From positions 186,001 to 250,000 of the IMG/VR virus record IMGVR_UViG_3300023174_002543: 64,000 nt of DNA, one strand, 5' to 3'. The notes beneath the pieces were generated by a model. That model searched no databases. It was not told where the DNA came from and was given only the letters and a program-made list of their open reading frames with translations. The position numbers and the translations under genes are program-made. This document shows positions 492 through 21,518 of the stretch, in pieces; the first letter of the stretch is position 1, and the number at the start of each line of letters is the position of its first letter.

Positions 492-815
492 CTAAACGCT
501 AAATGAACTTCCGCATCCACATGTACTTACCGTATTGGGATTGCTTATCTTAAATTCCGACCCCATTAAGTCCTCTGTATAATCAATTTCCGCGCCTTGC
601 ACATATTGAGCCGACATTGAGTCAACCAGGACACTTGTGGAACCTATCTCAAATTCAAAGTCATCTTCGTTTTTCATTTCATCTAGTGTAAAGCCATAAC
701 TAAATCCAGCACATCCTCCACCTTGCACAAACATACGTAGTTTGAGATCAGGATTGTTTTCCTCTGCTAAAATATCTGCTATCTTAACTTGTGCTGATTG
801 TGTTATTGTTATCAT
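492..815 (-). CDS. erpA: A-type Fe-S carrier (ErpA/IscA/HesB family)
   Basis: GGGCAGFSY and C-terminal TCGCGSSF motifs. Confidence 0.93.
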
Positions 816-1357
816 ATATATCCTCTTACTTTATCAAAGAAACTTGGTTTATTTACTTCTGGACCTTTTACGTCACCATGACGTTTATGTTGGCTAGCAT
901 AATCATAGTACTTACCAACAACATCAAATCCTGGTTTAAAGAATATAGCTGCGGGTGGTCTGCTCATACGTAACATACCTACACGTTCTTTACCTTCTGG
1001 TGCAGTAACAATACCCTTTGTATTGTAGTCAACTTTTTGCAACCATGCATTGGGTTTTAACTTCACAAGCCAGACGTATGGATGCTCCCCGGCAAACAAA
1101 CTATCTGCATTAATATATTCTTTTAAGGGATAGAACCAAAGAGCCGGACGTCCCTTCCCTGCACCGATATAGTCTACACTAAAGTCAGGATCTTCTAGGT
1201 CGGGACTACGACCAAACTTTTGTTTTGCACTGAATGCTAATTGGTCCAATCTAGTGAAACGCACAAAGTATTCACCAGAACCATGTTTACGTACATCACG
1301 CATAATTTGATCCTTGATGCTGACCTTGGCTTCAGTAATAAATTCAGTAGCTCTCAT
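812..1357 (-). CDS. Putative capsid-packaged protein with [10 protein letters not shown] leader; function unknown
   Basis: Leader shared with the next two genes; single domain of about 170 aa. Confidence 0.6.
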
Positions 1358-1361
1358 TATT

Positions 1362-2948
1362 TTATTTCTTTATAGGTTTCCAATGGAATATAATCATACC
1401 CATATTAGGATATTCTTCATGTTGCCATTTTGGTCCTAATATATTCTGAATTACTGGGACGAAATATTTACGATACAAACTAGCACGGTTATCGCCTTTG
1501 GCAGTAAATGATATAGCCGGCGGCCGAGCCTTAGCCATGTATTCAGGCAACTGCTTTTTAACAATATTGAGAACTGTGCTTAATATCTTAATCGTTGATT
1601 TACTAGCCGAAGTAGGCATCTCGGGTGCATCATAATCTCCATTCACTGTAAACGTAATATGTAATGTGTCATTAAATTCACTACGGTCAAAGAATACATC
1701 TACCCAATGATTATCTACTGTAGAATGAAATAGGCTGCGCTTTCTTTTGTTATTGGGTTTATATTCACTAGGACTATCACCTAATTCAGTAAGTTGTTTT
1801 TGTGGTTTGATACGTGTTAATGTATAGATCGCGGCACTGGGATAATCTTTTCTTGTCAAATCGTAACCGGTACCAGTGATATATCTTTGAAGCATTCTAT
1901 CATACAGTCTAGCTCTACTGCCTGTAGGGTCATCATCTTTTTCTGCACTGAAATTCAACATCACCGGTTTACGCTTGGCAATGAATTGTTGCATGGCAGT
2001 CAACACAGTGGCAAACACACGCGGAGCATCGCCTTCTCCGGTGATCTCCATGTTTTCATCACGCTCAAACTCCACCATCCAGCTGTTGTCGCCCTGGGCC
2101 ATGAACAGTACAACTAATTCACTGCCGTCATCTAAGTCGGATGTAGCATGCCAGTCACCATTTGTTTTTTCCCAATGAACATTATAAGGTTGGTTAAAGG
2201 CTTCTAGTATACCTTGTTCTTTAAGTTGCGGTATCGGAACATATGCTAGTATATCTTTTTTATTCATTAACTCGGCAGCGGCCCATGCTCTATGTGTACC
2301 ATCTAATATATAACCTCTTGTATCTATAACAATAGGTCTCTTGTCTATATGATGCATACTATATTCACCTGCATGTCTAAAGTCTACAAATCTGCCACGA
2401 CCGTATGGATCATATGTATCAGGTTCTTGTTCTGCATCATCATACTCTTGGTCAGGTATATGTAGACTAGATAAAGGAACACGCTTCAATTGATATTGCG
2501 GATGACGCATTATTAATCTCTTTAAGAATCCACCACCTTGTTGGTCTTTAGGATGTATATCACCTACATAATTCCATACTTCTATATTGGATACAACATT
2601 AGAATTTGTTTCTTCCCAAACACGAACTTCTTCTCCACGGTGTTTATTCCAGAAACCTGCACCTGCATCAGTTTGGTCATAACTTCTAACAATCTTATAG
2701 CCAAGTTTTTTGATATAATCATACATCACTTTAGCAATACCTTGACCTTGATATTTTTCATTAACCCACAGGTCTTGTGGATCTAGCTCTTTGTCATCAC
2801 CCATATAGAATGTAACATGACCTAATACGTTATTACCCCAGTCATCAAGGGCATCAACCATTAACTCATAGTCATTCTTGGTTACTTTTAGTGTTATGCC
2901 TTCGTAGTCTACTAGTTTGGCTTCTGTTATAAATTCACTTGCTCTCAT
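1362..2948 (-). CDS. Multi-domain putative internal head protein: GNAT-like, ParB/Srx-like and two copies of a repeated ~130-aa domain
   Basis: MRASEFITEA leader. GNAT motif A (VNEKYQGQGIA...QTDAGAGFW). ParB motif (PIVID...ILDGTHRAWAA). Linkers VWEE, QGILEA and QLTE. Confidence 0.7.
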   Translation of the reverse strand: MRASEFITEAKLVDYEGITLKVTKNDYELMVDALDDWGNNVLGHVTFYMGDDKELDPQDLWVNEKYQGQGIAKVMYDYIKKLGYKIVRSYDQTDAGAGFWNKHRGEEVRVWEETNSNVVSNIEVWNYVGDIHPKDQQGGGFLKRLIMRHPQYQLKRVPLSSLHIPDQEYDDAEQEPDTYDPYGRGRFVDFRHAGEYSMHHIDKRPIVIDTRGYILDGTHRAWAAAELMNKKDILAYVPIPQLKEQGILEAFNQPYNVHWEKTNGDWHATSDLDDGSELVVLFMAQGDNSWMVEFERDENMEITGEGDAPRVFATVLTAMQQFIAKRKPVMLNFSAEKDDDPTGSRARLYDRMLQRYITGTGYDLTRKDYPSAAIYTLTRIKPQKQLTELGDSPSEYKPNNKRKRSLFHSTVDNHWVDVFFDRSEFNDTLHITFTVNGDYDAPEMPTSASKSTIKILSTVLNIVKKQLPEYMAKARPPAISFTAKGDNRASLYRKYFVPVIQNILGPKWQHEEYPNMGMIIFHWKPIKK

Positions 2949-4894
2949 AGTACTGCCAAATATTCTTTAAATTTATTGTGTCTATCTTGTAGTCCACTTA
3001 GACCGGGATTGATTGCATTGGTTACTTCTTTTGTGTTGCTAAAATTACTAACATTGGGTCTAACTTGATTCTTCCAGAACCATAGTGCAATTTGAGCACC
3101 TACATCTAGATTACTAGCCAGGTCGGGGTTTTTTACCAATCTATCATCTCCGAATATTTGCTTGCTTGCTCGGGTATAATTGTCACGTCCAGTCAACTGA
3201 ATAAAGCCACGACCTTTAAATAGTTCTCCGTCGCCTTTTACTTTGTTACCTAATTGTCTTGCCTTGCGCGGAGCTTCATATTTGGCAAATCTTTTTTTAT
3301 TGCCCACTTCCTTCATCTTACCAAAGTCCCAACTCTCATGCCGAGTCTGAGCCATGAATTGTGCCAGTTCTACTCCATTGAGTCCTGCGGCTTTAGCAGC
3401 AGTTTGTAGTGCAGCTTCAGCATCACTATTGTCACTTAATAATGTTACACCTTTTTCTTCTTCTTTGTCATCACGTGAAAACTTTGGAATCATTGATGTA
3501 AGTTTATCTTTAAATGAAGTTGTTGGTTGTGCAACTGGTTGTGCAACTTTAGTAGGCTCTTGCTTAAGAGTAGGCTTTACAGTAGCGGGCATTTTACTAA
3601 TAGGTTTAGAATAATCAGGTACTATAACTTTTTGTCCTATTTCTAACTTAGTATTACGACCCATCTTGTTGAGTTTGTATATCTCTAATGGATTTACATT
3701 GTTTTGTCTTGCTATACTGTAAACGGTATCTCCGGGTTCAACTATTTGTTGAACCATTTGAGGAGCCTTTGCATTAGCACCCATTGCCATCGCACCTGCC
3801 ATAGCACCTGTTGCTAGTGCAGATTTCCAATCTTCTTCTAACTCATTTTCTGTTACACCTTGCTTACTTTCATTCATACCCTCTGCACCATAATGAGCAA
3901 TTTTACCTGCTTTGTGCATGTTTTTTACTTGTTTGAATACTTTATCTAAATCATCAGTAACACGGACTATCCACCCTTGACTAGCGATATATTTAAATGG
4001 ATCACCGATGGGCATTTGTTTAATAGGCTTACTAGGATTTTCACTAAACCATTCACCTGTTGGTAATTGTCTGAAATCGCCAGCATCAAACACAGTTAAG
4101 TAAGTTTTACGACTACGCATTGCTGGCAAATCTTTTTGGTCAAAATAAACAATAGGTTGACCGTTTTGCGTAAACTCTACATAGCGTGTTTCATGTGCAT
4201 TGCCTGTAGCGTACAGTGCTGTTCTACGCGGATCACCGGCAAACAATCCTTTAGTAGTGTTAGTTTTAAGATTTTTGTTTTTCCAATAACTATCGTCACC
4301 TGTATCTAAACCACTCTGACTCCAATCATCCGTATGCTTGTATGCTTTGAGGCCAGACACAAAATCTGTGACAGGTTTAGAATCAATTCGTGTTACTGTT
4401 GCACCTTCCGCCACACCTTGTTTTAATCTACTCAATTCATATATAACTAAATCACCATTATCTGCACGAAAAGCCCTATAACCCCAGGCTTTGGCATAAC
4501 GAATCACCAGTCTGTCATACAACTTGGCACGACTCTCAGGATTTGGTTGAGGCTGGTCAGGCTCATAATATATTGTTGGATCAGTTGCTTTAATAGCTGA
4601 AAAACTCAATCTTGAAGGTTTGTATTTTTTGATGTATTTTTGTATAGCGTTTAACACCGTGGCAAAGATACGCTGTGCATCACCTTCGCCTGTGACTTCT
4701 TGGCTGTTGTTTCTATAAAATTCAACCTGCACTACTTCTTTGCCTTCGTCATCTTGTTGATTGTTGAACATGATGCTTAAATTTGTTCCGTCGGGCAATT
4801 TTGTGTTTAAATCAACGTCACCGTAATCGCTTTTTTCCCATTTGCCTTTATAGGGTTGGTCAAAGGCCTCTGTTATAAATTCACTTGCTCTCAT
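2945..4894 (-). CDS. Multi-domain virion-associated protein: repeated domain, unknown domain, LysM and GH19 lysozyme/chitinase
   Basis: Start moved to MRASEFITEA (ATGA overlap with the sod stop). LysM: VEPGDTVYSIARQNNV. GH19: AQTRHES, GRGFIQLTGRDNY, INPG. Linkers QGVAEG and QGVTEN. Confidence 0.8.
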   Translation of the reverse strand: MRASEFITEAFDQPYKGKWEKSDYGDVDLNTKLPDGTNLSIMFNNQQDDEGKEVVQVEFYRNNSQEVTGEGDAQRIFATVLNAIQKYIKKYKPSRLSFSAIKATDPTIYYEPDQPQPNPESRAKLYDRLVIRYAKAWGYRAFRADNGDLVIYELSRLKQGVAEGATVTRIDSKPVTDFVSGLKAYKHTDDWSQSGLDTGDDSYWKNKNLKTNTTKGLFAGDPRRTALYATGNAHETRYVEFTQNGQPIVYFDQKDLPAMRSRKTYLTVFDAGDFRQLPTGEWFSENPSKPIKQMPIGDPFKYIASQGWIVRVTDDLDKVFKQVKNMHKAGKIAHYGAEGMNESKQGVTENELEEDWKSALATGAMAGAMAMGANAKAPQMVQQIVEPGDTVYSIARQNNVNPLEIYKLNKMGRNTKLEIGQKVIVPDYSKPISKMPATVKPTLKQEPTKVAQPVAQPTTSFKDKLTSMIPKFSRDDKEEEKGVTLLSDNSDAEAALQTAAKAAGLNGVELAQFMAQTRHESWDFGKMKEVGNKKRFAKYEAPRKARQLGNKVKGDGELFKGRGFIQLTGRDNYTRASKQIFGDDRLVKNPDLASNLDVGAQIALWFWKNQVRPNVSNFSNTKEVTNAINPGLSGLQDRHNKFKEYLAVL

Positions 4895-5445
4895 AGACTC
4901 TTGCCCCAACGTGTATTGATGACATTCCAGTTTATGATCTTCCATTGTTCACGCAAATACTTCTTTTTATCGGCTCCGTAGTCAAGTGTCCAGGCATGTT
5001 CCCACCAATCAATTAATAACAATATATCATTACGAACTTCATGGTTTTTGATTGTTTTGAGTTTGCCATCACTTGCTAGATAAATCCAACCACTACCCTG
5101 TATAGTCATAGCCTCAGTCTCAATACTATCTTTGAGACCGTCGTAACTTCCATAATGCTTGTTTATAAATCCAAGCATAGGGCCGTTGGGCTTGTTATTG
5201 TTGCGTACCTCACGGAACTGAGGGAACAGAGTATTGTGTAGGAAAGCACCTGCGTAGTTAAATTCTTTATCACCTTCACCCTTGTTATATCTATCAGCAT
5301 ATCCATGTGCTAGTTTACCAAAGTGCAAGTCTAAGGCACCGGCACTGAATACAGGCTTTACATCCTTATATTCAAAATTTAACGGAATGATTTCTATATC
5401 TTGAGGCTTGTTTTTATCCTCAAGAAGGCTGATTATATCTCGCAT
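4891..5445 (-). CDS. sod: Fe/Mn superoxide dismutase
   Basis: LHFGK..HGY, FLHN, QGSGW and DWWEHAW motifs; the H/H/D/H metal ligands are present. Confidence 0.9.
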   Translation of the reverse strand: MRDIISLLEDKNKPQDIEIIPLNFEYKDVKPVFSAGALDLHFGKLAHGYADRYNKGEGDKEFNYAGAFLHNTLFPQFREVRNNNKPNGPMLGFINKHYGSYDGLKDSIETEAMTIQGSGWIYLASDGKLKTIKNHEVRNDILLLIDWWEHAWTLDYGADKKKYLREQWKIINWNVINTRWGKSL

Positions 5446-5471
5446 ACTTATATTTATCGTATGCGAGATAT
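5435..5471 (-). promoter_or_regulatory. 13-bp inverted repeat covering the sod start codon, with a late-promoter-like motif in the loop
   Basis: Minus strand reads ATATCTCGCATAC-GATAAATATAA-GTATGCGAGATAT. Confidence 0.75.
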
Positions 5472-5476
5472 GTTTA

Positions 5477-7816
5477 TCAGAAGCGTACTGCTAATTGAAT
5501 TTGTGCTATATCAGCAACGACTCCATTTTGTCTTTGTTGACCTATTTTTAGTATCATAGTAGAGTTGTTTTGTGCGTTATACATCAATGTTCCGTAAGCA
5601 GTAGATAGATTTTTATTGTTTTGTGCTACTTCCCCGGATACTGCCCAATTTTGATTAAATTGGTGTTCATAGCGCATTCCATACTCTGTAGTATCAACTG
5701 TTTGCTTTAGGTTAGTATAGTCAACTGCTGTTAGTGAAGAACCAGTTTCCATAACATAGTCACGTGAATTATGTTCTTTTCTAGCACCAACGAAAGGTCT
5801 GAATCCCTTCATAGCAGGGGTATATACACGCAAATGCGCCCAGGTATCCTGACCATGTGTATTAGCATTGTTACTCATACTTAATTCAGGTAATGTATGG
5901 AATGTATTATAAGTATTTTTGGATTGTCCTACATCAGTTTTAAATATCCAATCATTATGTACATATAGGTTATAGATAGTAAGTGCTTCTTTGTATAAAC
6001 TACCGCCACTGTTAGTGCCATCTAATACAGTGCTTATTCGGTTGTATTGTAAACCTAACAATGAAGAACGACTAATTCTATGCTCTGCACCAAATGTATC
6101 TATTGTTGCAGTATAACTATACCCATCTGATAAGTTAGACTTTGTTTTTGAACCATGTATATAAATGTTAATATCACGGTCATCAAAACTACGGTTAGAG
6201 ATTCTATCGTCTTTAACTAAGTTTCTACTTAATGGATCACTTAATAAACTATAGTTGATTCTAGTATTGGTTTCAGATAGTTTATCCATTTGGTCAATGC
6301 GTGTAGTATAGTTTTGATCCGTTGAGGTAATCTGAACATCATCTACAATAGTTGTAGTTGTTGTCACATCATTTCTTGTAGTAACTACGGTTACAGGAGT
6401 ATCTGTTGTAGTAGTTGTTGTACCATCACTCCAAGTAGTAACTGAAGTAGGAGTTGTAACGGTAGTTATAGTTACCGGTGTTGTATTAGTAACCACAGTA
6501 GTTACAGGTGTTGTACTAGTTAGTGTGGTAGTACGAATGATATTGAGTTCTCTTACACCACGCTCACCTCTAGTATTAGCATATGTAGTAACATCAACGG
6601 TTGAACCCCTTGTTATATTACTTGTTGTTACTGTTGTACCTGGTGTTTCTGTTACTACAACCGATGATGTGCCCGGTGTAGTACTGACTACTGTAGGTGC
6701 AGGTGTAGACATACTGCTTACAGAGCCTGCGGTTCCTGGATTAGCAATAGAACCAACTAATGTACTTGTGCTGGTTGATGTGTTATTACTATCATAGTAA
6801 TAGGTAACTTCACCTATCTGTACGCTATCACATGCTAATGTACCTAATGCTGATTGACAACCTGATATTGAACCATACGTATCAATAGCCTTAATGCTAG
6901 GGAATGTTATAAAGTAATAAACATATGGATTATTATTATTAATAGTAATCATACTTGTTTGAGTATAACGACCGCTGACATTTTCTAATGTTGTACTTTG
7001 ATTTGCAGTAATCTCAGTCCAAGTACGACCATCATTACTACCATACAAGGTAAACTTAGTAGGATCTCTTGGTACAAAGTCGTTAGCAGTAGTAAATTTA
7101 ATACCATTGATGACTTTACCTGCATTCAATGTAATTGTAAATCCTGCATTAGCACGGTCAAAGTTTAAATATTTCGTACCACTACTTCCGTCAACTGCCT
7201 TAGTTGCACCTTCACCACTTGGACTATTACTACTTGTAGGAGTAACAGTACTGATAATGCTACTTGTAACTGCTGTATAGTTTACAGTAGGTGCAACAGT
7301 TTGTCCTGCGGCTAATGGAGTAGTTGAACCACCTACACTCAATGCATTAACTTGTGATAATGTTGGATTGCGTGTTCCAGTCCATGACAACCCACTAGTG
7401 TTAGCAAAACCTTGTGTCATACTAAACAACTGACCGGTGTTGTTATCATTGCCCACAAAGAAGAAATAGTCTGTGCCCATATTAATAATATGCCCAGTGC
7501 CCATTACTGCTTTTTGAACGCCTGCTGAATTATATTGAATAGCATTGTATGGATTTGTGCTGTTACCTGTAGCTACAAATTTAATATAGTCTCCGGAAGA
7601 CCAACTTAGTTGACCACTTGTCCATGGAATCTTATATGCTGTTCCAGGATTTTTACTATAGATTTGACAAGTGGTCGTATTCATACAAGCATTAACATTC
7701 CACTGACTATCTGCTATCTGTGCTTGACCAAATTGTAAATCTGTAAAATCTGCACTTGCATTTACGCTCATGGCGGTAAGCAGAGCCATAATGGCTCCCT
7801 TTAAAAATCTTATCAT
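5477..7816 (-). CDS. Autotransporter-like outer-membrane protein: signal peptide, F5/8 type C (discoidin)-like domain, Thr-rich stalk, C-terminal beta-barrel
   Basis: Signal peptide ending ASA. Discoidin pattern AVDGSSGTK...RDPTKFTLYGSNDGRTW. Alternating beta-strand C-terminus ending in Phe (QLAVRF). Confidence 0.7.
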   Translation of the reverse strand: MIRFLKGAIMALLTAMSVNASADFTDLQFGQAQIADSQWNVNACMNTTTCQIYSKNPGTAYKIPWTSGQLSWSSGDYIKFVATGNSTNPYNAIQYNSAGVQKAVMGTGHIINMGTDYFFFVGNDNNTGQLFSMTQGFANTSGLSWTGTRNPTLSQVNALSVGGSTTPLAAGQTVAPTVNYTAVTSSIISTVTPTSSNSPSGEGATKAVDGSSGTKYLNFDRANAGFTITLNAGKVINGIKFTTANDFVPRDPTKFTLYGSNDGRTWTEITANQSTTLENVSGRYTQTSMITINNNNPYVYYFITFPSIKAIDTYGSISGCQSALGTLACDSVQIGEVTYYYDSNNTSTSTSTLVGSIANPGTAGSVSSMSTPAPTVVSTTPGTSSVVVTETPGTTVTTSNITRGSTVDVTTYANTRGERGVRELNIIRTTTLTSTTPVTTVVTNTTPVTITTVTTPTSVTTWSDGTTTTTTDTPVTVVTTRNDVTTTTTIVDDVQITSTDQNYTTRIDQMDKLSETNTRINYSLLSDPLSRNLVKDDRISNRSFDDRDINIYIHGSKTKSNLSDGYSYTATIDTFGAEHRISRSSLLGLQYNRISTVLDGTNSGGSLYKEALTIYNLYVHNDWIFKTDVGQSKNTYNTFHTLPELSMSNNANTHGQDTWAHLRVYTPAMKGFRPFVGARKEHNSRDYVMETGSSLTAVDYTNLKQTVDTTEYGMRYEHQFNQNWAVSGEVAQNNKNLSTAYGTLMYNAQNNSTMILKIGQQRQNGVVADIAQIQLAVRF

Positions 7817-7904: not shown

Positions 7905-8798
7905 TTAGCAGTTGTACACGCCTGGATCCATAACTATAGTACCATTACCGTCTGAATTATACCAACTACCTCCGCCAGCACCAGCACCACTGTATGGGCT
8001 ATCCGAACTACGTGATAATCCTATGAAGGTTAACTGGTGTCCTACTGCACTGTTATCTTCTGCTAATGTAGGATTTCCATACCCAAGTGATTGAATCAAT
8101 GCGATACAATTTGAAACAGCAGGTAATGGTGCAGTTGGAACTGTAATTGTACTTGATGTTGGATTATATACATACGAATTTGAAACTATGCGAATATCTG
8201 TTTGATAACCTACAAAAGGTAAACCATCTTGCGGATTTGGCCAACCATTACCAATAGTCAATGAATTAGATTCATACACTATATTGTCTGTTTGCGTACC
8301 ACCGCAACGAACTCCGTTAACCCAAACGGCCTCTACATTACTATTGGCAGCATTTCTACTTACTGCAATATGATACCAAACATTTTTTACAAAATTTGTA
8401 CTAGGTACATATATATTTTGACCAACAAAATATCCATCTACTCTTATGTTTGAATTATTAACTGTTTGACTACCGTCCCAATAATTATCATTAACATATA
8501 TTCCTAGATAGTGCGGTTGTCTTGTGGTATCGCTTGGACTACCTATAAAAGTACCTACGCATCTACTAGCACTATTATCCCATTTAACCCATCCCTCTAC
8601 TGTAAATGAACGGGTAGTAGTTGGTCTTGCTTTACCAGTTATGAGATTATAAGGTCCGGTATAATCTGTGTTATTTACGATAGCGTCATTTGGAGTAGAA
8701 CCGGATCCACCTCCACCTCCGCCTGTGCCGGCTCCGAATGTGATCCCTTTGCCTATTGTTAGGCCTGCGTGTAATGTTAATGTTAATGGTGCAACCAT
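7905..8798 (-). CDS. LamG/concanavalin-A-like lectin domain protein, probably virion-associated
   Basis: FTVEGWVKW, WYHIAVSR and FVGYQTDIRI motifs; Gly linker. Confidence 0.75.
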   Translation of the reverse strand: MVAPLTLTLHAGLTIGKGITFGAGTGGGGGGSGSTPNDAIVNNTDYTGPYNLITGKARPTTTRSFTVEGWVKWDNSASRCVGTFIGSPSDTTRQPHYLGIYVNDNYWDGSQTVNNSNIRVDGYFVGQNIYVPSTNFVKNVWYHIAVSRNAANSNVEAVWVNGVRCGGTQTDNIVYESNSLTIGNGWPNPQDGLPFVGYQTDIRIVSNSYVYNPTSSTITVPTAPLPAVSNCIALIQSLGYGNPTLAEDNSAVGHQLTFIGLSRSSDSPYSGAGAGGGSWYNSDGNGTIVMDPGVYNC

Positions 8799-8834
8799 GA
8801 TAATCCTTTTTAATTATCACGTATTTATCTCTTT

Positions 8835-9050
8835 TTAACGTCTACGGGTAATTCTGCCCTTAGATAAATCATAGGGGCTAAACTCTACCTCTACAGTATC
8901 GCCTAATAATATCTTAATATCGTGCTTACGCATTCTACCACTAATATAGCCCATTATGATATTACTACCGGGCATCTCTATCCTAAACATAGCGTTGGGT
9001 AATACTTCTACTACCTTCCCGTCTAGTTTAATACCTTCTTCTTTTGCCAT
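8835..9050 (-). CDS. infA: Translation initiation factor IF-1
   Basis: 71 aa; G.VVE.LPNAMF, ISGRMRK..I.IL.GD.V.VE.SPYDL.KGRI. Confidence 0.96.
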
Positions 9051-9440: not shown

Positions 9441-9501
9441 AATGATAATTGTTGAGTTGACATAGTTGTTAGTATAGCACAAATAGGATTTATTGTCAAC
9501 C

Positions 9502-10126: not shown

Positions 10127-10681
10127 TTAGATAGTCAAATCTCTTTTACCCACATATGGATTATAGATTTTTTCTAATTGTTGTATAGTGTGACCAGTAC
10201 TTTCATCACTATGTTTAACTGCAATGCCACCTGCACTAGCCCAAGCACTCAAGTACTTTCCGAAGTCATCTACTAATACTTGTGGTTTACCGTTTTTAGT
10301 AGCATATTTATATTTTGCACTTGTAAAGATAGCATTACTGCTAGTACCCGGATTGTAAGTGTCTAACCATTCACGCTTACCTTTGATGCTTGCTTGCCCC
10401 TCCATTCTAAGAGGAGCACTTAATACAGTAAAAGGTATTTTGTTTCTATGTAACCAAGCAATGATTACCTGTCCACCAGGTAATGGATCTAAGTCTCTAA
10501 AAAAATGATATACATTTTCGGGACCTGATTTTGCCAATCTAACGATTGCTTCCTCAGGGTTTGTGATATCTTTATAATGTTTAACTTTTTCTATCTCAGC
10601 CCAACGACCAAAGAAGTCGGCTTGAACTCCATCCATATCAAGGTATAAATGGGGCATTGATTCGATTTCTTGGATTTTCAT
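10127..10681 (-). CDS. HAD-family 5'(3')-deoxyribonucleotidase
   Basis: LYLDMDGVQADF, LSAP, K..WL and LVDD motifs. Confidence 0.85.
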   Translation of the reverse strand: MKIQEIESMPHLYLDMDGVQADFFGRWAEIEKVKHYKDITNPEEAIVRLAKSGPENVYHFFRDLDPLPGGQVIIAWLHRNKIPFTVLSAPLRMEGQASIKGKREWLDTYNPGTSSNAIFTSAKYKYATKNGKPQVLVDDFGKYLSAWASAGGIAVKHSDESTGHTIQQLEKIYNPYVGKRDLTI

Positions 10682-10785
10682 ATTAATAGTATACTATATT
10701 GTATTTAGTATGTCAATATTTATTTGACCAAAATCAAATAAATACTAATAAGAAGTATTATAACTAAAGTATAAGGAGTCAATCT

Positions 10786-18326: not shown

Positions 18327-19922
18327 TTATCTTTTTTTGACCACTGATTGCTTGCTGCGACCCACATTACCGCCTGCTTTAACCTGTTGTGATAGTTTGG
18401 TAACTTTATCGGGTTCGGCTATACTTTGTGAAATTTCGGGTTCGTCAATATCTACATCTGGCGTAGTGTCAACATCAATATATGGACCGTCTGGGCCCAT
18501 ATCTTCATAGTCACTTGCGTTACGACCTAACTTGAAACTAAACCCAGCACTACTTGGTTCTACTGCACTAGATTTGTTTTCCATAGTTACAACGCCTTCA
18601 AGTTTTGAGGGCCATTGTGTAGCAAATGTTATCTCACCATTAGAATTGTAATCGGTGTATTGTTGAATAAAGTTCATTTCTAAAACTTGTAGAATAGTAT
18701 CTGCAAATTCTGGAACAACTGCTTTACTGTTAACTAACTGTGCAATGGTTTTCTTAATCTTATAAACCATTTTACCACCGTCACTAGCCTTCTCACTGTT
18801 AACATCATTTATTAAAGGTTGATATACTTGCGGTAATTGTAATGATTGTATACCCTTTTCATTCTTTTGACCCTTGATACTATTAATACTTGCAATACAT
18901 TGTTGTTGTAGTTTAGGAGCCTTGCTTTCAAATGGTAAAAATTTATGCCAAACTTTTGGTACACCGTTTGGACTAACTGAATATAAGAAATCCATAATCT
19001 TAAATGCCTGTACAATAGTACTTGGACCAGTCTCATCTTTACCTGCCTGACATAATTCAATTAATCTAACTGCATTCTTTAATTTTGCATTACGTTTGAT
19101 ATCTGGACTTATCTTCAACCCTGATATTGCAGGAGCTGCTCCACCACCGGTACCTTTACTACTGATATTCAAACTATGGCTTGTATTTGGATTTTTAATA
19201 ACTGCATAACTATCAGCAATGTTATTGTTAGCCGCACTAGGGAAGTTCAATGTTAACTCACCGATATCACCACCTAGCCACTCTAAGAACTGTTGCTTTC
19301 TTGGGAAGCGACTACGACCATATAATAATGCCAGTACACCCAAGTATTCACCTGCATAATCAACAATTGCTTTGCGTTCTGATTCTTTTGCTTTTTCTAA
19401 ATATTCAGGTGGTAATTGACAATATTCACCTGCAATAATATATTGTGCTAGTTGAATAACTACTCTACCATAGTCTGTACTTTGAAGTACTTGATTGCCT
19501 GCAATTTGTTCGTATAAATCCGTAGCAGGAATATCTCTGTCTGTAATCTTAATTAAACTTGGTTTCAGTAATACGGATTCTTTTGTACTACCGCCAAATT
19601 CTTCATTCTTGGCCAATTGTGACATCGGAATTTCTTGTCCGTCTTTAGTTAAGATAGTTGTTTTCTCACCCTTGAACGTACCGTCCTTCTTCATTTTAGT
19701 TAGACGCTTTGCCTCATTTGGATCAATAAAGATTTGGTCACCTGTTACATTGTCAATGAAGGGTTGATTTGTGGATATCTTTTGAATCAATAACGTCCAA
19801 CGTGCAGGGTCTTTGTTTATTTGGGTGGGGGTTAAGCCGTTAGCAAAAAGAGTTTGAGGAGCATTAGGATCCTTCTTTGTTGCTTCTTCTAAATTTTCTA
19901 GTATTGTTAATAAATCACGCAT
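18327..19922 (-). CDS. Large late protein with an MRDLL..LE leader and a possible PD-(D/E)xK nuclease-like core
   Basis: AGEY.G...FP...N..ADSY...NISSKG pattern; TAAATA 6 nt before the ATG. Confidence 0.55.
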   Translation of the reverse strand: MRDLLTILENLEEATKKDPNAPQTLFANGLTPTQINKDPARWTLLIQKISTNQPFIDNVTGDQIFIDPNEAKRLTKMKKDGTFKGEKTTILTKDGQEIPMSQLAKNEEFGGSTKESVLLKPSLIKITDRDIPATDLYEQIAGNQVLQSTDYGRVVIQLAQYIIAGEYCQLPPEYLEKAKESERKAIVDYAGEYLGVLALLYGRSRFPRKQQFLEWLGGDIGELTLNFPSAANNNIADSYAVIKNPNTSHSLNISSKGTGGGAAPAISGLKISPDIKRNAKLKNAVRLIELCQAGKDETGPSTIVQAFKIMDFLYSVSPNGVPKVWHKFLPFESKAPKLQQQCIASINSIKGQKNEKGIQSLQLPQVYQPLINDVNSEKASDGGKMVYKIKKTIAQLVNSKAVVPEFADTILQVLEMNFIQQYTDYNSNGEITFATQWPSKLEGVVTMENKSSAVEPSSAGFSFKLGRNASDYEDMGPDGPYIDVDTTPDVDIDEPEISQSIAEPDKVTKLSQQVKAGGNVGRSKQSVVKKR

Positions 19923-19931
19923 AATATGTAT

Positions 19932-20423
19932 TTAGCACTTGAACAAATCTTGGTGTTTAAACCAACGTTTTTGTCCATGACTAGTTTTTAGCGCAATACC
20001 GTGTTTAGCTAATTTGTCACGGAATACAAAGAAACTAGGACCGTGACTTAGAATGAAATCTTTACCTTTTCTATAACGCTTGGGTCCATCTATATCCCAT
20101 TGATATTGATGACACATTTCATGTGCTAGTGTAGTTACCATCCACTGCGGGCAGAACCATTTATCCATCATTTTTATAGTACAGTAACTCCCTGTATAGT
20201 TTATTGAAGTTTCTGCTATACACATGCCCCAGTATTTCTTACAATGACTAGCTAAAACTAACTTTGGCATATGTAGTTTATTGTCAAAAATTAACCAATT
20301 CAGTTGTTCATATACATGTCTAATATCACTTTTTGAGGGTCTATAGGGTAATTTTCTCTGTAAATAAACAGGGGGAAGAGGAAAATCCATTATTTCTTCT
20401 AAGGAGTAGTTAATGAGTTTCAT
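19932..20423 (-). CDS. SprT-like zinc metalloprotease
   Basis: TLAHEMCH and HG..F motifs. Confidence 0.8.
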   Translation of the reverse strand: MKLINYSLEEIMDFPLPPVYLQRKLPYRPSKSDIRHVYEQLNWLIFDNKLHMPKLVLASHCKKYWGMCIAETSINYTGSYCTIKMMDKWFCPQWMVTTLAHEMCHQYQWDIDGPKRYRKGKDFILSHGPSFFVFRDKLAKHGIALKTSHGQKRWFKHQDLFKC

Positions 20424-20822: not shown

Positions 20823-21518
20823 ATGATTTTTGGCTTTGATATAATTAGTGATTTAAACCTAACAGAGAATGATATCTTTGATTGGGAAGGAAAGCCAACA
20901 AGTCTTTATTGTGTGCTTGCAGGTAACATATCTAGCGACCTGCACGTACTCTATAAAACTATCAAACATTTGAGTAAGTTATATCAAGGTGTTTTTTATA
21001 TAGATGGTTTTATAGAAAATAGCCAAATAGAAGATAAAGACCGCGTTATAGATGAAATATCAAAAATATTCACTGGTATGAAAAATGCAGTATATCTACA
21101 TAACAATGTAGTTGTAGTAGAGGGAGTAGCATTAGTAGGAGTGAATGGGTGGTACGGAAATCAAGCCACTACACAAGGAGACACACTCAATCTAAGAATG
21201 AATAGGTATGATGATTTGGCATACCTGCAAAAAACAATAGAGAAATTGCAACTTCATATAGATGTAAAACAAATCGTAATAATTTCTAATAGTATACCTT
21301 CTATTGAATTGTATTTTGGTGAGAAACCTAATATAGATCCAGCTGAGATAAATCTAAATTATGTGTTAGATACTGATACTGAGAGTAAAATAACTACTTG
21401 GGTATTCGGAACACATAAAAAAATAGTTGACACCAAAATTAACGGTGTCAACTATTTTAATAACCCTTGTCTTACTAAGATTCCTTATTACCCTAAAAGA
21501 ATCAATATAGAAGTTTAA
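20823..21518 (+). CDS. Degenerate metallophosphoesterase-fold protein
   Basis: Motif order is preserved but the ligands are altered (SDLN, AGNI, GFIE, FGTH). Confidence 0.65.
   Translation: MIFGFDIISDLNLTENDIFDWEGKPTSLYCVLAGNISSDLHVLYKTIKHLSKLYQGVFYIDGFIENSQIEDKDRVIDEISKIFTGMKNAVYLHNNVVVVEGVALVGVNGWYGNQATTQGDTLNLRMNRYDDLAYLQKTIEKLQLHIDVKQIVIISNSIPSIELYFGEKPNIDPAEINLNYVLDTDTESKITTWVFGTHKKIVDTKINGVNYFNNPCLTKIPYYPKRINIEV

What the first reader, a model, noticed from the sequence alone, without database searches (positions are those of the whole stretch)
4891..5471. Late superoxide dismutase under hairpin control, with a possible packaging leader
SEEN: a perfect 13-bp inverted repeat buries the sod ATG, with GATAAATA in its 11-nt loop 5 nt before the ATG. 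The SOD has an extra N-terminus, MRDIISLLED, similar to MRDLLTILEN of 18327-19922, and it heads the cargo-gene operon. KNOWN: T4 e, soc and I-TevI are silenced on read-through RNA by hairpins that cannot form on late transcripts. INFERENCE: sod is strictly late, and may be packaged to protect the virion or early infection from oxidative stress.
Basis: partly seen in the sequence, partly recalled or inferred. Interest (0 to 1): 0.6.

Follow-up and report, generated by a model that had tools for sequence, protein, structure and literature searches.

The report
Hairpin-masked leaderless phage superoxide dismutase gene
A giant uncultured phage carries a superoxide dismutase gene whose start codon is hidden in an RNA hairpin, while a T4-style late promoter in the hairpin loop probably makes a leaderless, translatable message; whether the enzyme is packed into the virus particle remains open.

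Summary
On the minus strand, a perfect 13-bp inverted repeat (5459-5471 / 5435-5447) holds the sod ATG (5445-5443) in its 3' arm. GATAAATA sits in the 11-nt loop, 5 nt before the ATG.

GATAAATA is the most enriched 8-mer upstream of genes in this 367-kb genome. It precedes baseplate, tail-tube, adaptor and fibre genes. The genome also encodes a T4 gp55-type late sigma factor.

By T4 geometry the transcript should start at the A of the ATG, and there is no Shine-Dalgarno sequence. About 32-42 genes share this "motif, 4-5 nt, ATG" layout.

Among 43 distinct relatives with the same layout, 17 have a significant start-occluding stem, with arms that track synonymous codon changes. Controls gave 1/22 and 0/27. 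The closest relatives lack the hairpin, so it is labile, not essential.

The protein keeps all four Fe/Mn-SOD metal ligands. Its N-terminal leader MR[DE]xIx[LI]LE is conserved and ends in the L/I-x-E motif cut by T4-type prohead proteases, one of which the genome encodes. The next three genes carry a different leader, MRAsEFITEA, which resembles the T4 capsid-targeting sequence more closely.

Late, hairpin-gated, leaderless expression is well supported but not shown. Packaging is plausible and unproven.

The parts
5459..5471 (-). 5' arm of the 13-bp hairpin (ATATCTCGCATAC). It lies upstream of the promoter motif and is present only on read-through RNA.
5448..5458 (-). 11-nt loop, GATAAATATAA. 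It contains the late-promoter-type motif GATAAATA (5451-5458).
5435..5447 (-). 3' arm (GTATGCGAGATAT). It contains the sod ATG (5443-5445) and codons 2-4.
5476..5480 (-). Outer helix, 5' side (CUGAU). It overlaps the TGA stop codon (5477-5479) of the upstream 779-aa gene.
5429..5433 (-). Outer helix, 3' side (AUCAG), in sod codons 5-6.
4891..5445 (-). sod CDS, 184 aa, an Fe/Mn superoxide dismutase. The metal ligands H41, H70, D146 and H150 are conserved.
5416..5445 (-). Codons 1-10, the N-terminal leader MRDIISLLED. It is conserved as MR[DE][ILFY]Ix[LI]LE in all 80 relatives, and L7-L8-E9 fits the L/I-x-E protease motif.
2945..4894 (-). 649-aa gene coupled to sod by an ATGA overlap. It has the leader MRASEFITEA and LysM plus GH19/endolysin-like domains.
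1362..2948 (-). 528-aa gene with the leader MRASEFITEA and GNAT plus DUF6934 domains. Its ATG overlaps the previous stop codon.
812..1357 (-). 181-aa gene with the leader [10 protein letters not shown].
492..815 (-). IscA-like Fe-S assembly gene. In several relatives it is the gene directly coupled to sod.
5477..7816 (-). Upstream 779-aa gene with an F5/8 type C domain. Its transcripts would read into the hairpin. AATAAATA lies about 68 nt before its ATG.
7905..8798 (-). 297-aa Laminin_G_3 gene with its own GATAAATA (8822-8829) 23 nt before the ATG. In the closest relatives sod follows this gene directly.
8835..9050 (-). Phage IF-1. In many relatives it is the gene immediately upstream of sod.
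18327..19922 (-). 531-aa gene with the sod-like leader MRDLLTILEN. GCTAAATA (19929-19936) lies 6 nt before its ATG. It has no SD and no occluding hairpin.

Best explanation
sod encodes an intact Fe/Mn superoxide dismutase of a 367-kb uncultured jumbo phage that uses T4-type late transcription. The gene has its own late-type promoter element, GATAAATA, placed so that transcription should begin at the A of the ATG. The result is a leaderless mRNA whose 5'-terminal AUG is free. RNA that reads in from upstream also carries the 5' arm and folds into an 18-bp (13 + 5) hairpin that buries the AUG and codons 2-6. sod would then be translated only from its own promoter and not from read-through RNA. 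Shown here: the hairpin, the motif and its genome-wide association with structural genes, the late sigma factor, the absence of an SD, and the enrichment and covariation of occluding stems in relatives. Inferred: the transcription start, the timing, and the translational block. The leaderless design alone already discriminates against internal initiation. That would explain why the hairpin is an optional, evolutionarily labile reinforcement. The conserved N-terminal helix ending in L-L-E may be a cleavable capsid-targeting leader. This part is less likely than the rest (about 0.3).
For: GATAAATA is the most enriched 8-mer upstream of genes: 28 of 40 copies lie within 60 nt of a predicted start. 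The genes behind it include a baseplate wedge, tail tube, head-tail adaptor, tail fibres and virion structural proteins. A late sigma factor lies at genome 50127-51077 (phrog_12791, 1.4e-68; matches T4 gp55 at 1.3e-5).

The first T of the T4 TATAAATA box is at position -13 (PMC2988020). A 5-nt spacer therefore puts +1 on the A of the ATG.

The spacing from the motif to the ATG is bimodal. Of 131 NATAAATA copies, 30 lie 4-7 nt from an ATG, none lie 8-15 nt away, and the rest lie 16-29 nt away. ATAAATA-N4-5-ATG occurs 32 times, against 6 for the reversed control pattern. SD-like 4-mers occur in 4 of 42 genes of this class, against 59% of other genes and 10.7% of random positions.

In sod relatives the motif lies 4-7 nt from the ATG in 42 of 43 distinct upstream sequences.

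Hairpin statistics: z = -6.9, and it is one of only 7 long perfect inverted repeats in the genome. Another of the 7 straddles a GATAAATA and buries the SD of the adaptor gene. Occluding stems with shuffle p <= 0.05 occur in 17 of 43 relatives with the promoter. They occur in 1 of 22 relatives where sod is translationally coupled, and in 0 of 27 members of the 531-aa family.

Upstream arms pair better with their own start region than with those of other lineages: -10.3 versus -7.8 kcal/mol, Wilcoxon p = 1.3e-4. The arms follow synonymous changes: CGA/CGT/AGA at codon 2 and GAT/GAC/GAA at codon 3.

The T4 precedent (genes e, soc, 49, I-TevI) is reviewed in PMC3014915.

Leader: M1, R2 and E9 are invariant, and I5, L8 and K11 are nearly so. 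A prohead protease of the T4 gp21 family is present (PF03420, 99.5 bits; phrog_207). T4 gp21 cuts after L/I-x-E (PMC9026906). The PA5oct homologue gp261 carries the 'ESI-MS/MS' note in its GenBank record, which refers to mass spectrometry of purified virions (PMC7318152).
Against: There are no transcript 5' ends, timing data or protein data for this phage.

The closest relatives (91-94% aa identity) lack the hairpin. L162/L163 keep the same motif and spacer but have a different stem-loop upstream. L161/L164 have neither motif nor hairpin. More than half of the promoter-bearing lineages show no significant stem.

In this genome the two genes upstream of sod look late themselves. Read-through RNA would therefore also be late, and the hairpin would not create a temporal switch here.

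The test meant to separate sense-strand RNA pairing (G-U) from DNA or antisense pairing (A-C) was inconclusive: 19 versus 14 sequences, p = 0.09.

Leader: it differs from the genome's main CTS-like leader, MRAxEFIxE. Only one other protein family shares it. The Vibrio phage homologue lacks it. The PA5oct virion mass spectrometry also lists clearly non-structural enzymes. The conserved pairing of sod with an IscA-like gene suggests an intracellular role.
Confidence: 0.6

Rival explanations
1. The inverted repeat is a recent, largely neutral product of template-switch (quasi-palindrome) mutation next to a promoter and has no regulatory role.
For: The repeat is perfect (13/13), as expected for a young one. 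The closest relatives lack it, although they share the same promoter and spacer. The arms use different registers in different lineages, which fits repeated independent births.
Against: Occluding stems are enriched in exactly the promoter-bearing sod context: 17/43, against 1/22 and 0/27 in matched controls. One of those controls has the same ATGCGTGA coding start. Pairing is lineage-specific. A second long inverted repeat of the same design sits at another late gene.
Confidence: 0.15
2. The hairpin acts on the upstream message. It would be a 3' stabiliser, a processing site or a transcriptional insulator for the gene before sod, and hiding the AUG would be incidental.
For: The outer helix includes the upstream stop codon. 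L162/L163 and PA5oct have other stem-loops or terminators just before the sod promoter. Insulation of sod from upstream transcription is therefore a recurring theme.
Against: No U-tract follows the stem, and the terminator scan reports nothing at the hairpin. The 3' arm lies inside the sod coding sequence, which is costly for a mere terminator. The arms covary with sod codons.
Confidence: 0.12
3. The palindrome works at the DNA level. It could form a cruciform that presents the -10-like element single-stranded to the late polymerase, or it could be the binding site of a dimeric regulator.
For: The promoter motif always falls in the loop. The G-U versus A-C test did not clearly favour sense RNA.
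Against: The arm sequences differ between lineages while complementarity is kept, which argues against a protein-binding site. Most of the roughly 40 GATAAATA promoters have no such repeat.
Confidence: 0.08
4. The N-terminal leader is not a capsid-targeting signal. It would serve the enzyme inside the cell, for example in oligomerisation, in regulation, or as a tag read by the phage's own ClpXP/ClpS-type machinery. The SOD would then protect replication and Fe-S enzymes late in infection.
For: sod is conserved next to an IscA-like gene. The phage encodes ClpX-like, ClpP and DnaK proteins. The only other protein with this leader lies directly upstream of clpP. The leader differs from the MRAxEFIxE family.
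Against: The L-L-E ending with invariant E9 fits the T4-type protease motif. The leader resembles the T4 Alt N-terminus MELITELFDE in its pattern of hydrophobic and acidic residues. The PA5oct homologue is flagged in virion mass spectrometry.
Confidence: 0.5

Closest known systems
T4 genes e (lysozyme), soc, 49 and I-TevI: inhibitory hairpins bypassed by late promoters (reviewed in PMC3014915)
   Same: A helix sequesters the translation start on long transcripts. A TATAAATA-type late promoter lies in or next to the structure, so late transcripts lack the 5' strand. A gp55-type sigma factor is present.
   Different: The T4 late transcripts keep a Shine-Dalgarno leader. Here there is no SD and the spacing predicts a leaderless mRNA. 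The motif starts with G rather than T. The regulated gene is a SOD. The hairpin is present in only about 40% of related lineages.
Leaderless mRNAs (for example lambda cI from PRM; recognised through a 5'-terminal AUG, Brock et al. 2008, as cited in PMC5312081)
   Same: The -10-like element lies a few nt before an ATG. There is no SD. All members of the class start with ATG.
   Different: This is a large class (about 32-42 genes) driven by a phage late promoter in a T4-like transcription system. It is not enriched in T4, PA5oct or Vibrio phage 2.275.O. The phiKZ dRNA-seq study found no leaderless transcripts (PMC8244752).
T4 capsid-targeting sequences of IPII/IPIII (MKTYQEFIAEA) and the Alt propeptide (MELITELFDE)
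   Same: A cleavable-looking N-terminal peptide of about 10 residues with hydrophobic residues at positions 4 and 7-8 and an L/I-x-E site. The genome has a gp21-family protease. The neighbouring genes start MRAsEFITEA, which shares EFIxEA with T4.
   Different: sod's own leader, MRDIISLLED, lacks the EF core and is closer in pattern to Alt. No cleavage or packaging has been shown.
SOD homologue of Pseudomonas jumbo phage PA5oct (gp261, EST35_0261) and relatives MIJ3 and Callisto (annotated sodB)
   Same: 37% identity over residues 1-182. It has an N-terminal extension containing I-A-E followed by A. The gene has its own ATAAATA-containing promoter-like element after a terminator.
   Different: PA5oct has a 23-nt leader with an SD and no start-occluding hairpin. 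Its sod lies next to clpS and clpX, not next to cargo genes.

Membership tests
T4-type hairpin-gated late gene (e/soc/49/I-TevI type) | A stable helix sequesters the SD and/or the AUG on upstream-initiated RNA | tested here: met
   In the fold, 18 bp cover positions -2 to +17, with dG -21.5 and z -6.9. Stems are enriched and covary in relatives. This is a prediction only; there has been no structure probing.
T4-type hairpin-gated late gene (e/soc/49/I-TevI type) | A late promoter lies inside the structure, so late RNA lacks the 5' strand | tested here: met
   GATAAATA is in the loop. The motif is tied to structural genes genome-wide. The start site is inferred from T4 geometry and has not been mapped.
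T4-type hairpin-gated late gene (e/soc/49/I-TevI type) | gp55-type late sigma factor | tested here: met
   phrog_12791, 1.4e-68; matches T4 gp55 at E 1.3e-5.
T4-type hairpin-gated late gene (e/soc/49/I-TevI type) | Early or middle transcripts read through the gene | tested here: inconclusive
   Sigma-70-like promoters lie at 9499 and 10138-10716, and no terminator-like site lies between 9499 and sod on the minus strand. IF-1 is directly upstream of sod in many relatives. In this genome, two late-looking genes intervene.
T4-type hairpin-gated late gene (e/soc/49/I-TevI type) | Translation repressed on long RNA and relieved on late RNA | not testable with these tools
   Needs reporter, toeprint or ribosome-profiling experiments.
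Leaderless mRNA | No Shine-Dalgarno sequence, and an AUG start | tested here: met
   Only the loop and spacer sequence lie before the ATG. The class as a whole has SD-like 4-mers at background frequency.
Leaderless mRNA | Primary 5' end at the A of the AUG | not testable with these tools
This is inferred from the -13..-6 geometry and the sharp 4-5 nt spacing peak.
Fe/Mn superoxide dismutase | Three His and one Asp metal ligands in both domains | tested here: met
   H41, H70, D146 and H150 align to the ligands of 1UES/1QNN. They are invariant in 24 relatives. Sod_Fe_C scores 77.7 bits. Sod_Fe_N scores 20.8 bits, below the Pfam cut-off of 27.
Fe/Mn superoxide dismutase | Dismutase activity | not testable with these tools
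   Needs an enzyme assay.
T4-type capsid-targeting sequence | N-terminal peptide of about 10 residues ending in L/I-x-E, in a phage with a gp21-family protease | tested here: met
   L7-L8-E9, with E9 invariant. Protease: PF03420, 99.5 bits. Motif source: PMC9026906.
T4-type capsid-targeting sequence | Sequence similarity to the established CTS (T4 IPII/IPIII) or to the genome's own CTS-like consensus | tested here: not met
   MRDIISLLED shares only M, R and E9 with MRAsEFITEA, and lacks the EFIxEA core of T4 MKTYQEFIAEA. It resembles Alt MELITELFDE in pattern only.
T4-type capsid-targeting sequence | The protein is in the capsid, and the leader is removed | not testable with these tools
   The only evidence is the indirect PA5oct virion-MS flag on the homologue.

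The most novel reading that the evidence does not exclude
A large clade of uncultured jumbo phages places gp55-type late promoters 4-5 nt before start codons and so makes dozens of leaderless late mRNAs per genome, alongside a phage-encoded IF-1. At sod, an RNA hairpin additionally hides the AUG on read-through RNA. The SOD is then carried into the capsid by a cleavable MRDxIxLLE leader and injected with the DNA to blunt oxidative stress at the start of the next infection. It would be the first phage example of a packaged antioxidant enzyme.
Probability: 0.2. Interest if true: 0.8.

Novelty: new variant of a known kind. Interest (0 to 1): 0.6.

Why it matters
If the start site is confirmed, this extends the classic T4 arrangement (a hairpin that is bypassed by a late promoter) to a leaderless design. 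In that design the promoter itself defines the only translatable mRNA. It would also reveal a whole class of about 32-42 leaderless late genes in a T4-like transcription system, in a phage that also encodes IF-1. That makes the role of phage initiation factors directly testable. A packaged SOD would add an antioxidant to the list of proteins that phages inject. The family is abundant: 3,134 clusters at 90% identity matched at E <= 1e-5.

Tried and rejected
- **Sequencing runs.** No read-level 5'-end or expression evidence was obtained, and read laying was not used.
- **Complex prediction.** Complex prediction of SOD residues 1-45 with the scaffold-position protein and the prohead protease returned 'no answer' (score 0.00). 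This is not evidence either way.
- **Second hairpin.** A second hairpin inside the coding region (+21..+47; window 5399-5406 with 5418-5425) has no compensatory changes in 57 sequences. Protein conservation explains it, so it was dropped.
- **Strand test.** The G-U versus A-C test for RNA against DNA pairing was inconclusive.
- **AUG pairing probability.** P(AUG paired to an upstream base) from partition functions discriminated poorly in this AT-rich context: 0.68, against 0.47 for shuffled sequences.
- **Rfam.** Only one sub-threshold hit, on the opposite strand (27 bits against a gathering score of 90).
- **DNA search.** megablast of the region against the phage collection found no match.
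- **The 531-aa protein.** It has no match in the phage collection, no PHROGs hit and only one sub-threshold Pfam hit. The Atlas search gave only weak restriction-endonuclease-like leads.
- **PA5oct supplements.** The PA5oct supplementary tables are not held, so peptide counts for gp261 could not be checked.
- **SOD model.** The AlphaFold model has only moderate confidence (pLDDT 67). It was used only to note a short N-terminal helix (residues 2-11) followed by coil.
Full report
**Context**

The window is bases 186,001-250,000 of a single 367,104-bp contig with 36.5% G+C. It is an IMG/VR virus record rated 100% complete. Nearly all genes in the window are on the minus strand. The genome encodes several T4-like functions:
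- a T4 gp55-type late sigma factor, next to an SbcD/gp47-like gene;
- a T4 gp21-family prohead protease;
- DnaK, a ClpX-like protein, ClpP, an ATP-dependent ligase and IF-1.

No close DNA relative is in the phage collection. The SOD family is very large in metagenomes. At least 595 IMG/VR loci encode a relative, and 3,134 clusters at 90% identity matched at E <= 1e-5. One member sits on a 368,830-bp contig, and NCBI lists that protein under 'uncultured Caudovirales phage'.

**The observation**

On the minus strand the sequence reads ATATCTCGCATAC, then the loop GATAAATATAA, then GTATGCGAGATAT.
- The arms are at 5459-5471 and 5435-5447 and are 13/13 complementary, with an 11-nt loop.
- The sod ATG (5445-5443) lies in the 3' arm.
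- GATAAATA (5458-5451) is followed by the 5 nt TAAGT and then the ATG.
- Folding adds an outer 5-bp helix (5476-5480 with 5429-5433) that includes the TGA stop codon of the upstream gene.
- The read-through RNA folds at -21.5 kcal/mol, z = -6.9, with 0 of 200 shuffles folding as well.
- The RNA that starts at the ATG has an essentially open 5' end.
- Only 7 perfect inverted repeats with arms of 12 bp or more exist in the whole genome. Order-2 Markov simulations gave about 0.8 per genome with 12-bp arms and none longer.

**The gene**

The 184-aa product matches Sod_Fe_C (7.5e-22). It matches Sod_Fe_N weakly (20.8 bits, below the Pfam cut-off). It matches solved Fe/Mn SODs down to 5e-21.

The four metal ligands (H41, H70, D146, H150) align with those of the Porphyromonas SOD. 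They are invariant in 24 relatives. Residue 18 aligns with residue 4 of the solved enzyme, so about 14-17 N-terminal residues are extra.

**Is GATAAATA a promoter, and a late one?**

- It is the most enriched 8-mer upstream of predicted genes: 28 of 40 copies, about 22-fold enrichment.
- The genes behind it include a baseplate wedge subunit, tail tube, head-tail adaptor, tail fibres and several virion structural proteins.
- T4 late promoters are an 8-bp TATAAATA box whose first T is at -13. Relatives of T4 use variants at -13/-12 (PMC2988020).

Together with the gp55-type sigma factor, this makes the motif a late-type promoter element. This is an inference from sequence and homology. No transcript has been mapped.

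**A leaderless class**

The distance from NATAAATA to the next ATG that opens an ORF of at least 60 aa is sharply bimodal. Of 131 copies, 30 lie 4-7 nt away (10, 16, 2 and 2 copies at 4, 5, 6 and 7 nt). None lie 8-15 nt away, and the rest lie 16-29 nt away with an SD in between.

Allowing [AG]CTAAATA variants, 42 ORFs have the short spacing. They include the portal-position gene and a 4,273-aa ORF.
- ATAAATA-N4-5-ATG occurs 32 times, against 6 for the reversed control pattern.
- T4 gives 2 versus 2, PA5oct 9 versus 6, and Vibrio phage 2.275.O none.
- SD-like 4-mers occur in 4 of 42 of these genes. They occur in 59% of other genes and at 10.7% of random positions.

With the box at -13..-6, a 5-nt spacer puts +1 on the A of the ATG. 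The sod layout is therefore one instance of a genome-wide design that most simply yields leaderless late mRNAs.

**Comparative test of the hairpin**

The 80 best IMG/VR relatives (73-84% aa identity) give 65 distinct upstream sequences.

In 43 of them, an [ACGT][AC]TAAATA-type motif precedes the ATG. It lies 4-7 nt before it in 42. In the other 22, sod is translationally coupled to an upstream gene and there is no motif.

A stem between the segment upstream of the motif and the start region (-4..+16) beats shuffles at p <= 0.05 in these proportions:

| Set | Significant stems |
|---|---|
| sod relatives with the promoter motif | 17 of 43 |
| sod relatives translationally coupled, no motif | 1 of 22 |
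| 531-aa family (same ATGCGTGA start, same motif) | 0 of 27 |

The arms differ between lineages and follow synonymous changes. Examples:
- ATGTCTCGCA / TGCGAGACAT (L052, Asp codon GAC);
- TCACGCATTAAG / CTTAATGCGTGA (L059, Arg codon CGT, loop exactly AATAAATA);
- GTCTTTCATACG / TGTATGAGAGAT (L033, Arg codon AGA, with G-U pairs);
- ATTATTTCT / AGAAATAAT (L025).

Each upstream segment pairs better with its own start region than with those of other lineages: -10.3 versus -7.8 kcal/mol, Wilcoxon p = 1.3e-4. Relatedness among the sequences inflates such tests. The control sets and the variety of arm registers argue that complementarity itself is selected.

Within this genome, another of the 7 long inverted repeats (genome 305896-305924, 12-bp arms) straddles a GATAAATA and buries the GGAG of the head-tail adaptor gene. 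That is exactly the T4 gene e layout.

**Limits of the hairpin evidence**

The closest relatives (91-94% aa identity) do not have the hairpin.
- L162/L163 keep TGATAAATA-TAAGT-ATG but have a different stem-loop further upstream.
- L161/L164 have sod 6 nt after the Laminin_G_3 gene, with no motif.

The hairpin is therefore labile and probably arose several times. That fits a reinforcing role. An internal AUG without an SD is already a poor start, so the leaderless design alone restricts translation to the promoter-proximal RNA. PA5oct reaches similar insulation with a terminator followed by a promoter-like element and a normal leader.

In this genome the two genes upstream of sod are the 297-aa Laminin_G_3 gene, with its own GATAAATA, and the 779-aa F5/8-C gene. 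Both look late. 'Strictly late' therefore does not follow from the hairpin here.

In many relatives the gene directly upstream is phage IF-1. Sigma-70-like promoters lie upstream of IF-1 in the window, with no terminator-like site between the promoter at 9499 and sod. The T4-style scenario of early read-through and late release fits that arrangement better. The G-U versus A-C test could not separate RNA pairing from DNA pairing.

**The leader**

All 80 relatives begin MR[DE][ILFY]Ix[LI]LE, followed by K-x-K-P-Q. Several codons are used for the same residues, so selection acts on the peptide. A moderate-confidence model (pLDDT 67) shows a short helix at residues 2-11, followed by coil, before the SOD fold.

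The only other ORF in the genome with this start is the 531-aa gene at 18327-19922.
- This pair ranks 9th of 57,630 N-terminal decapeptide pairs.
- The 531-aa family keeps MR[DEN]-hydrophobic-hydrophobic-x-[LI][LI].
- Nearly all its members also keep an L/I/F-x-E followed by A or G near residue 13. They have the same short-spacing motif.

T4 gp21 cuts after L/I-x-E. The first 10 residues of T4 IPIII are the capsid-targeting sequence, with positions 4 and 7 needed for targeting and positions 8 and 10 for processing (PMC9026906).

I read the T4 N-termini from the T4 record itself. IPII and IPIII start MKTYQEFIAEA, and Alt starts MELITELFDED.

The three genes after sod start MRASEFITEA, MRASEFITEA and [10 protein letters not shown]. 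At least seven ORFs in the genome start MRA[STN]EF[IL]xE. That is a close match to the T4 EFIxEA core.

In relatives, the slot between sod and an IscA-like gene holds a variable set of different MRAxEFIxE genes, nearly all joined by ATGA overlaps. This resembles a hypervariable cargo cassette.

sod's own leader lacks the EF core. It resembles Alt only in its pattern of hydrophobic and acidic residues.

The PA5oct homologue (37% identity from residue 1, N-terminus containing I-A-E then A) carries the 'ESI-MS/MS' note. That note refers to mass spectrometry of purified virions, which also listed seven 'virion-unrelated enzymes' (PMC7318152). The Vibrio phage homologue has no extension.

I put packaging of the SOD at roughly 0.3. 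The main alternative is an intracellular role, suggested by the sod-IscA pairing and the phage Clp/DnaK set.

**Comparison with known systems, and verdict**

Mechanistically this is the T4 e/soc/49/I-TevI device (PMC3014915), with one real difference. The late RNA is predicted to be leaderless, so the promoter both removes the inhibitory strand and creates the only competent start.

My searches of the held literature found no description of a leaderless late class in a jumbo or T4-like phage. The phiKZ dRNA-seq study found no leaderless transcripts (PMC8244752), and AR9 leaders are 26-491 nt (PMC5312081). These searches are limited, so this is not proof of novelty.

I class the finding as a new variant of a known kind, with interest 0.6.

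Noticed in passing
whole genome G000 (for example window 19923-19936; genome 59106, 125589, 256002): About 32-42 genes have a T4-late-type motif (NATAAATA or [AG]CTAAATA) 4-5 nt before an ATG with no SD. This implies a large class of leaderless late mRNAs. The pattern is not enriched in T4, PA5oct or Vibrio phage 2.275.O.
   Followed up: partly
window 8835-9050 (-): Phage-encoded translation initiation factor IF-1 (PF01176, 5.5e-21). In many relatives it is the gene immediately upstream of sod. A link to leaderless translation is possible but was not tested.
   Followed up: partly
window 812-4894 (-); genome 253554, 304291, 345827 and others: At least seven ORFs begin MRA[STN]EF[IL]xE, close to the T4 IPII/IPIII capsid-targeting sequence MKTYQEFIAEA. 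Three of them follow sod in a row. In relatives, the slot between sod and an IscA-like gene holds variable, ATGA-coupled genes with this leader, which resembles a hypervariable cargo cassette.
   Followed up: partly
genome G000:C1:305896-305924 (outside the window): A perfect 12-bp inverted repeat straddles a GATAAATA and buries the GGAG Shine-Dalgarno of the head-tail adaptor gene (305130-305891). It is a second hairpin of the T4 gene e design.
   Followed up: partly
L161-L164 (closest sod relatives): Relatives with 91-94% identical SOD lack the start-occluding hairpin. Two keep the same promoter and spacer behind a different stem-loop. Two have sod 6 nt after the Laminin_G_3 gene. In this genome the 779-aa F5/8-C gene lies between Laminin_G_3 and sod.
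   Followed up: yes
window 18327-19922 (-): The 531-aa protein shares the sod-type leader and lies between a SprT-like gene and clpP. Pfam and PHROGs give no significant hit. The protein Atlas gives only weak restriction-endonuclease-like leads (scores 0.88-0.89, TM 0.3-0.5).
   Followed up: partly
window 21420-21458: A perfect 15-bp inverted repeat with TTGACA in both arms lies between convergent genes. It is the longest perfect repeat in the genome and may be a bidirectional terminator or promoter element.
   Followed up: no
genome G000:C1:298761-298790 and 318048-318083: Two further long perfect inverted repeats (12-bp and 14-bp arms) lie at or next to candidate start codons of minus-strand genes. 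Their role is unexamined.
   Followed up: no
window 5399-5406 / 5418-5425: An 8-bp inverted repeat inside sod codons 7-16 would form a hairpin at +21..+47 of the leaderless RNA. It shows no compensatory change in 57 sequences, so protein conservation explains it.
   Followed up: yes
genome 60920-65157 (head module): The head-module proteins also have N-termini with [LI][LI]xE motifs: MKLFEMFD (75 aa), MDNKKFEKLIDLIINE (303 aa), MFDAIKPLLDTGIINE (366 aa, scaffold position) and ...EALLE followed by G in the 398-aa ORF at the capsid-gene position. This fits gp21-type processing.
   Followed up: no
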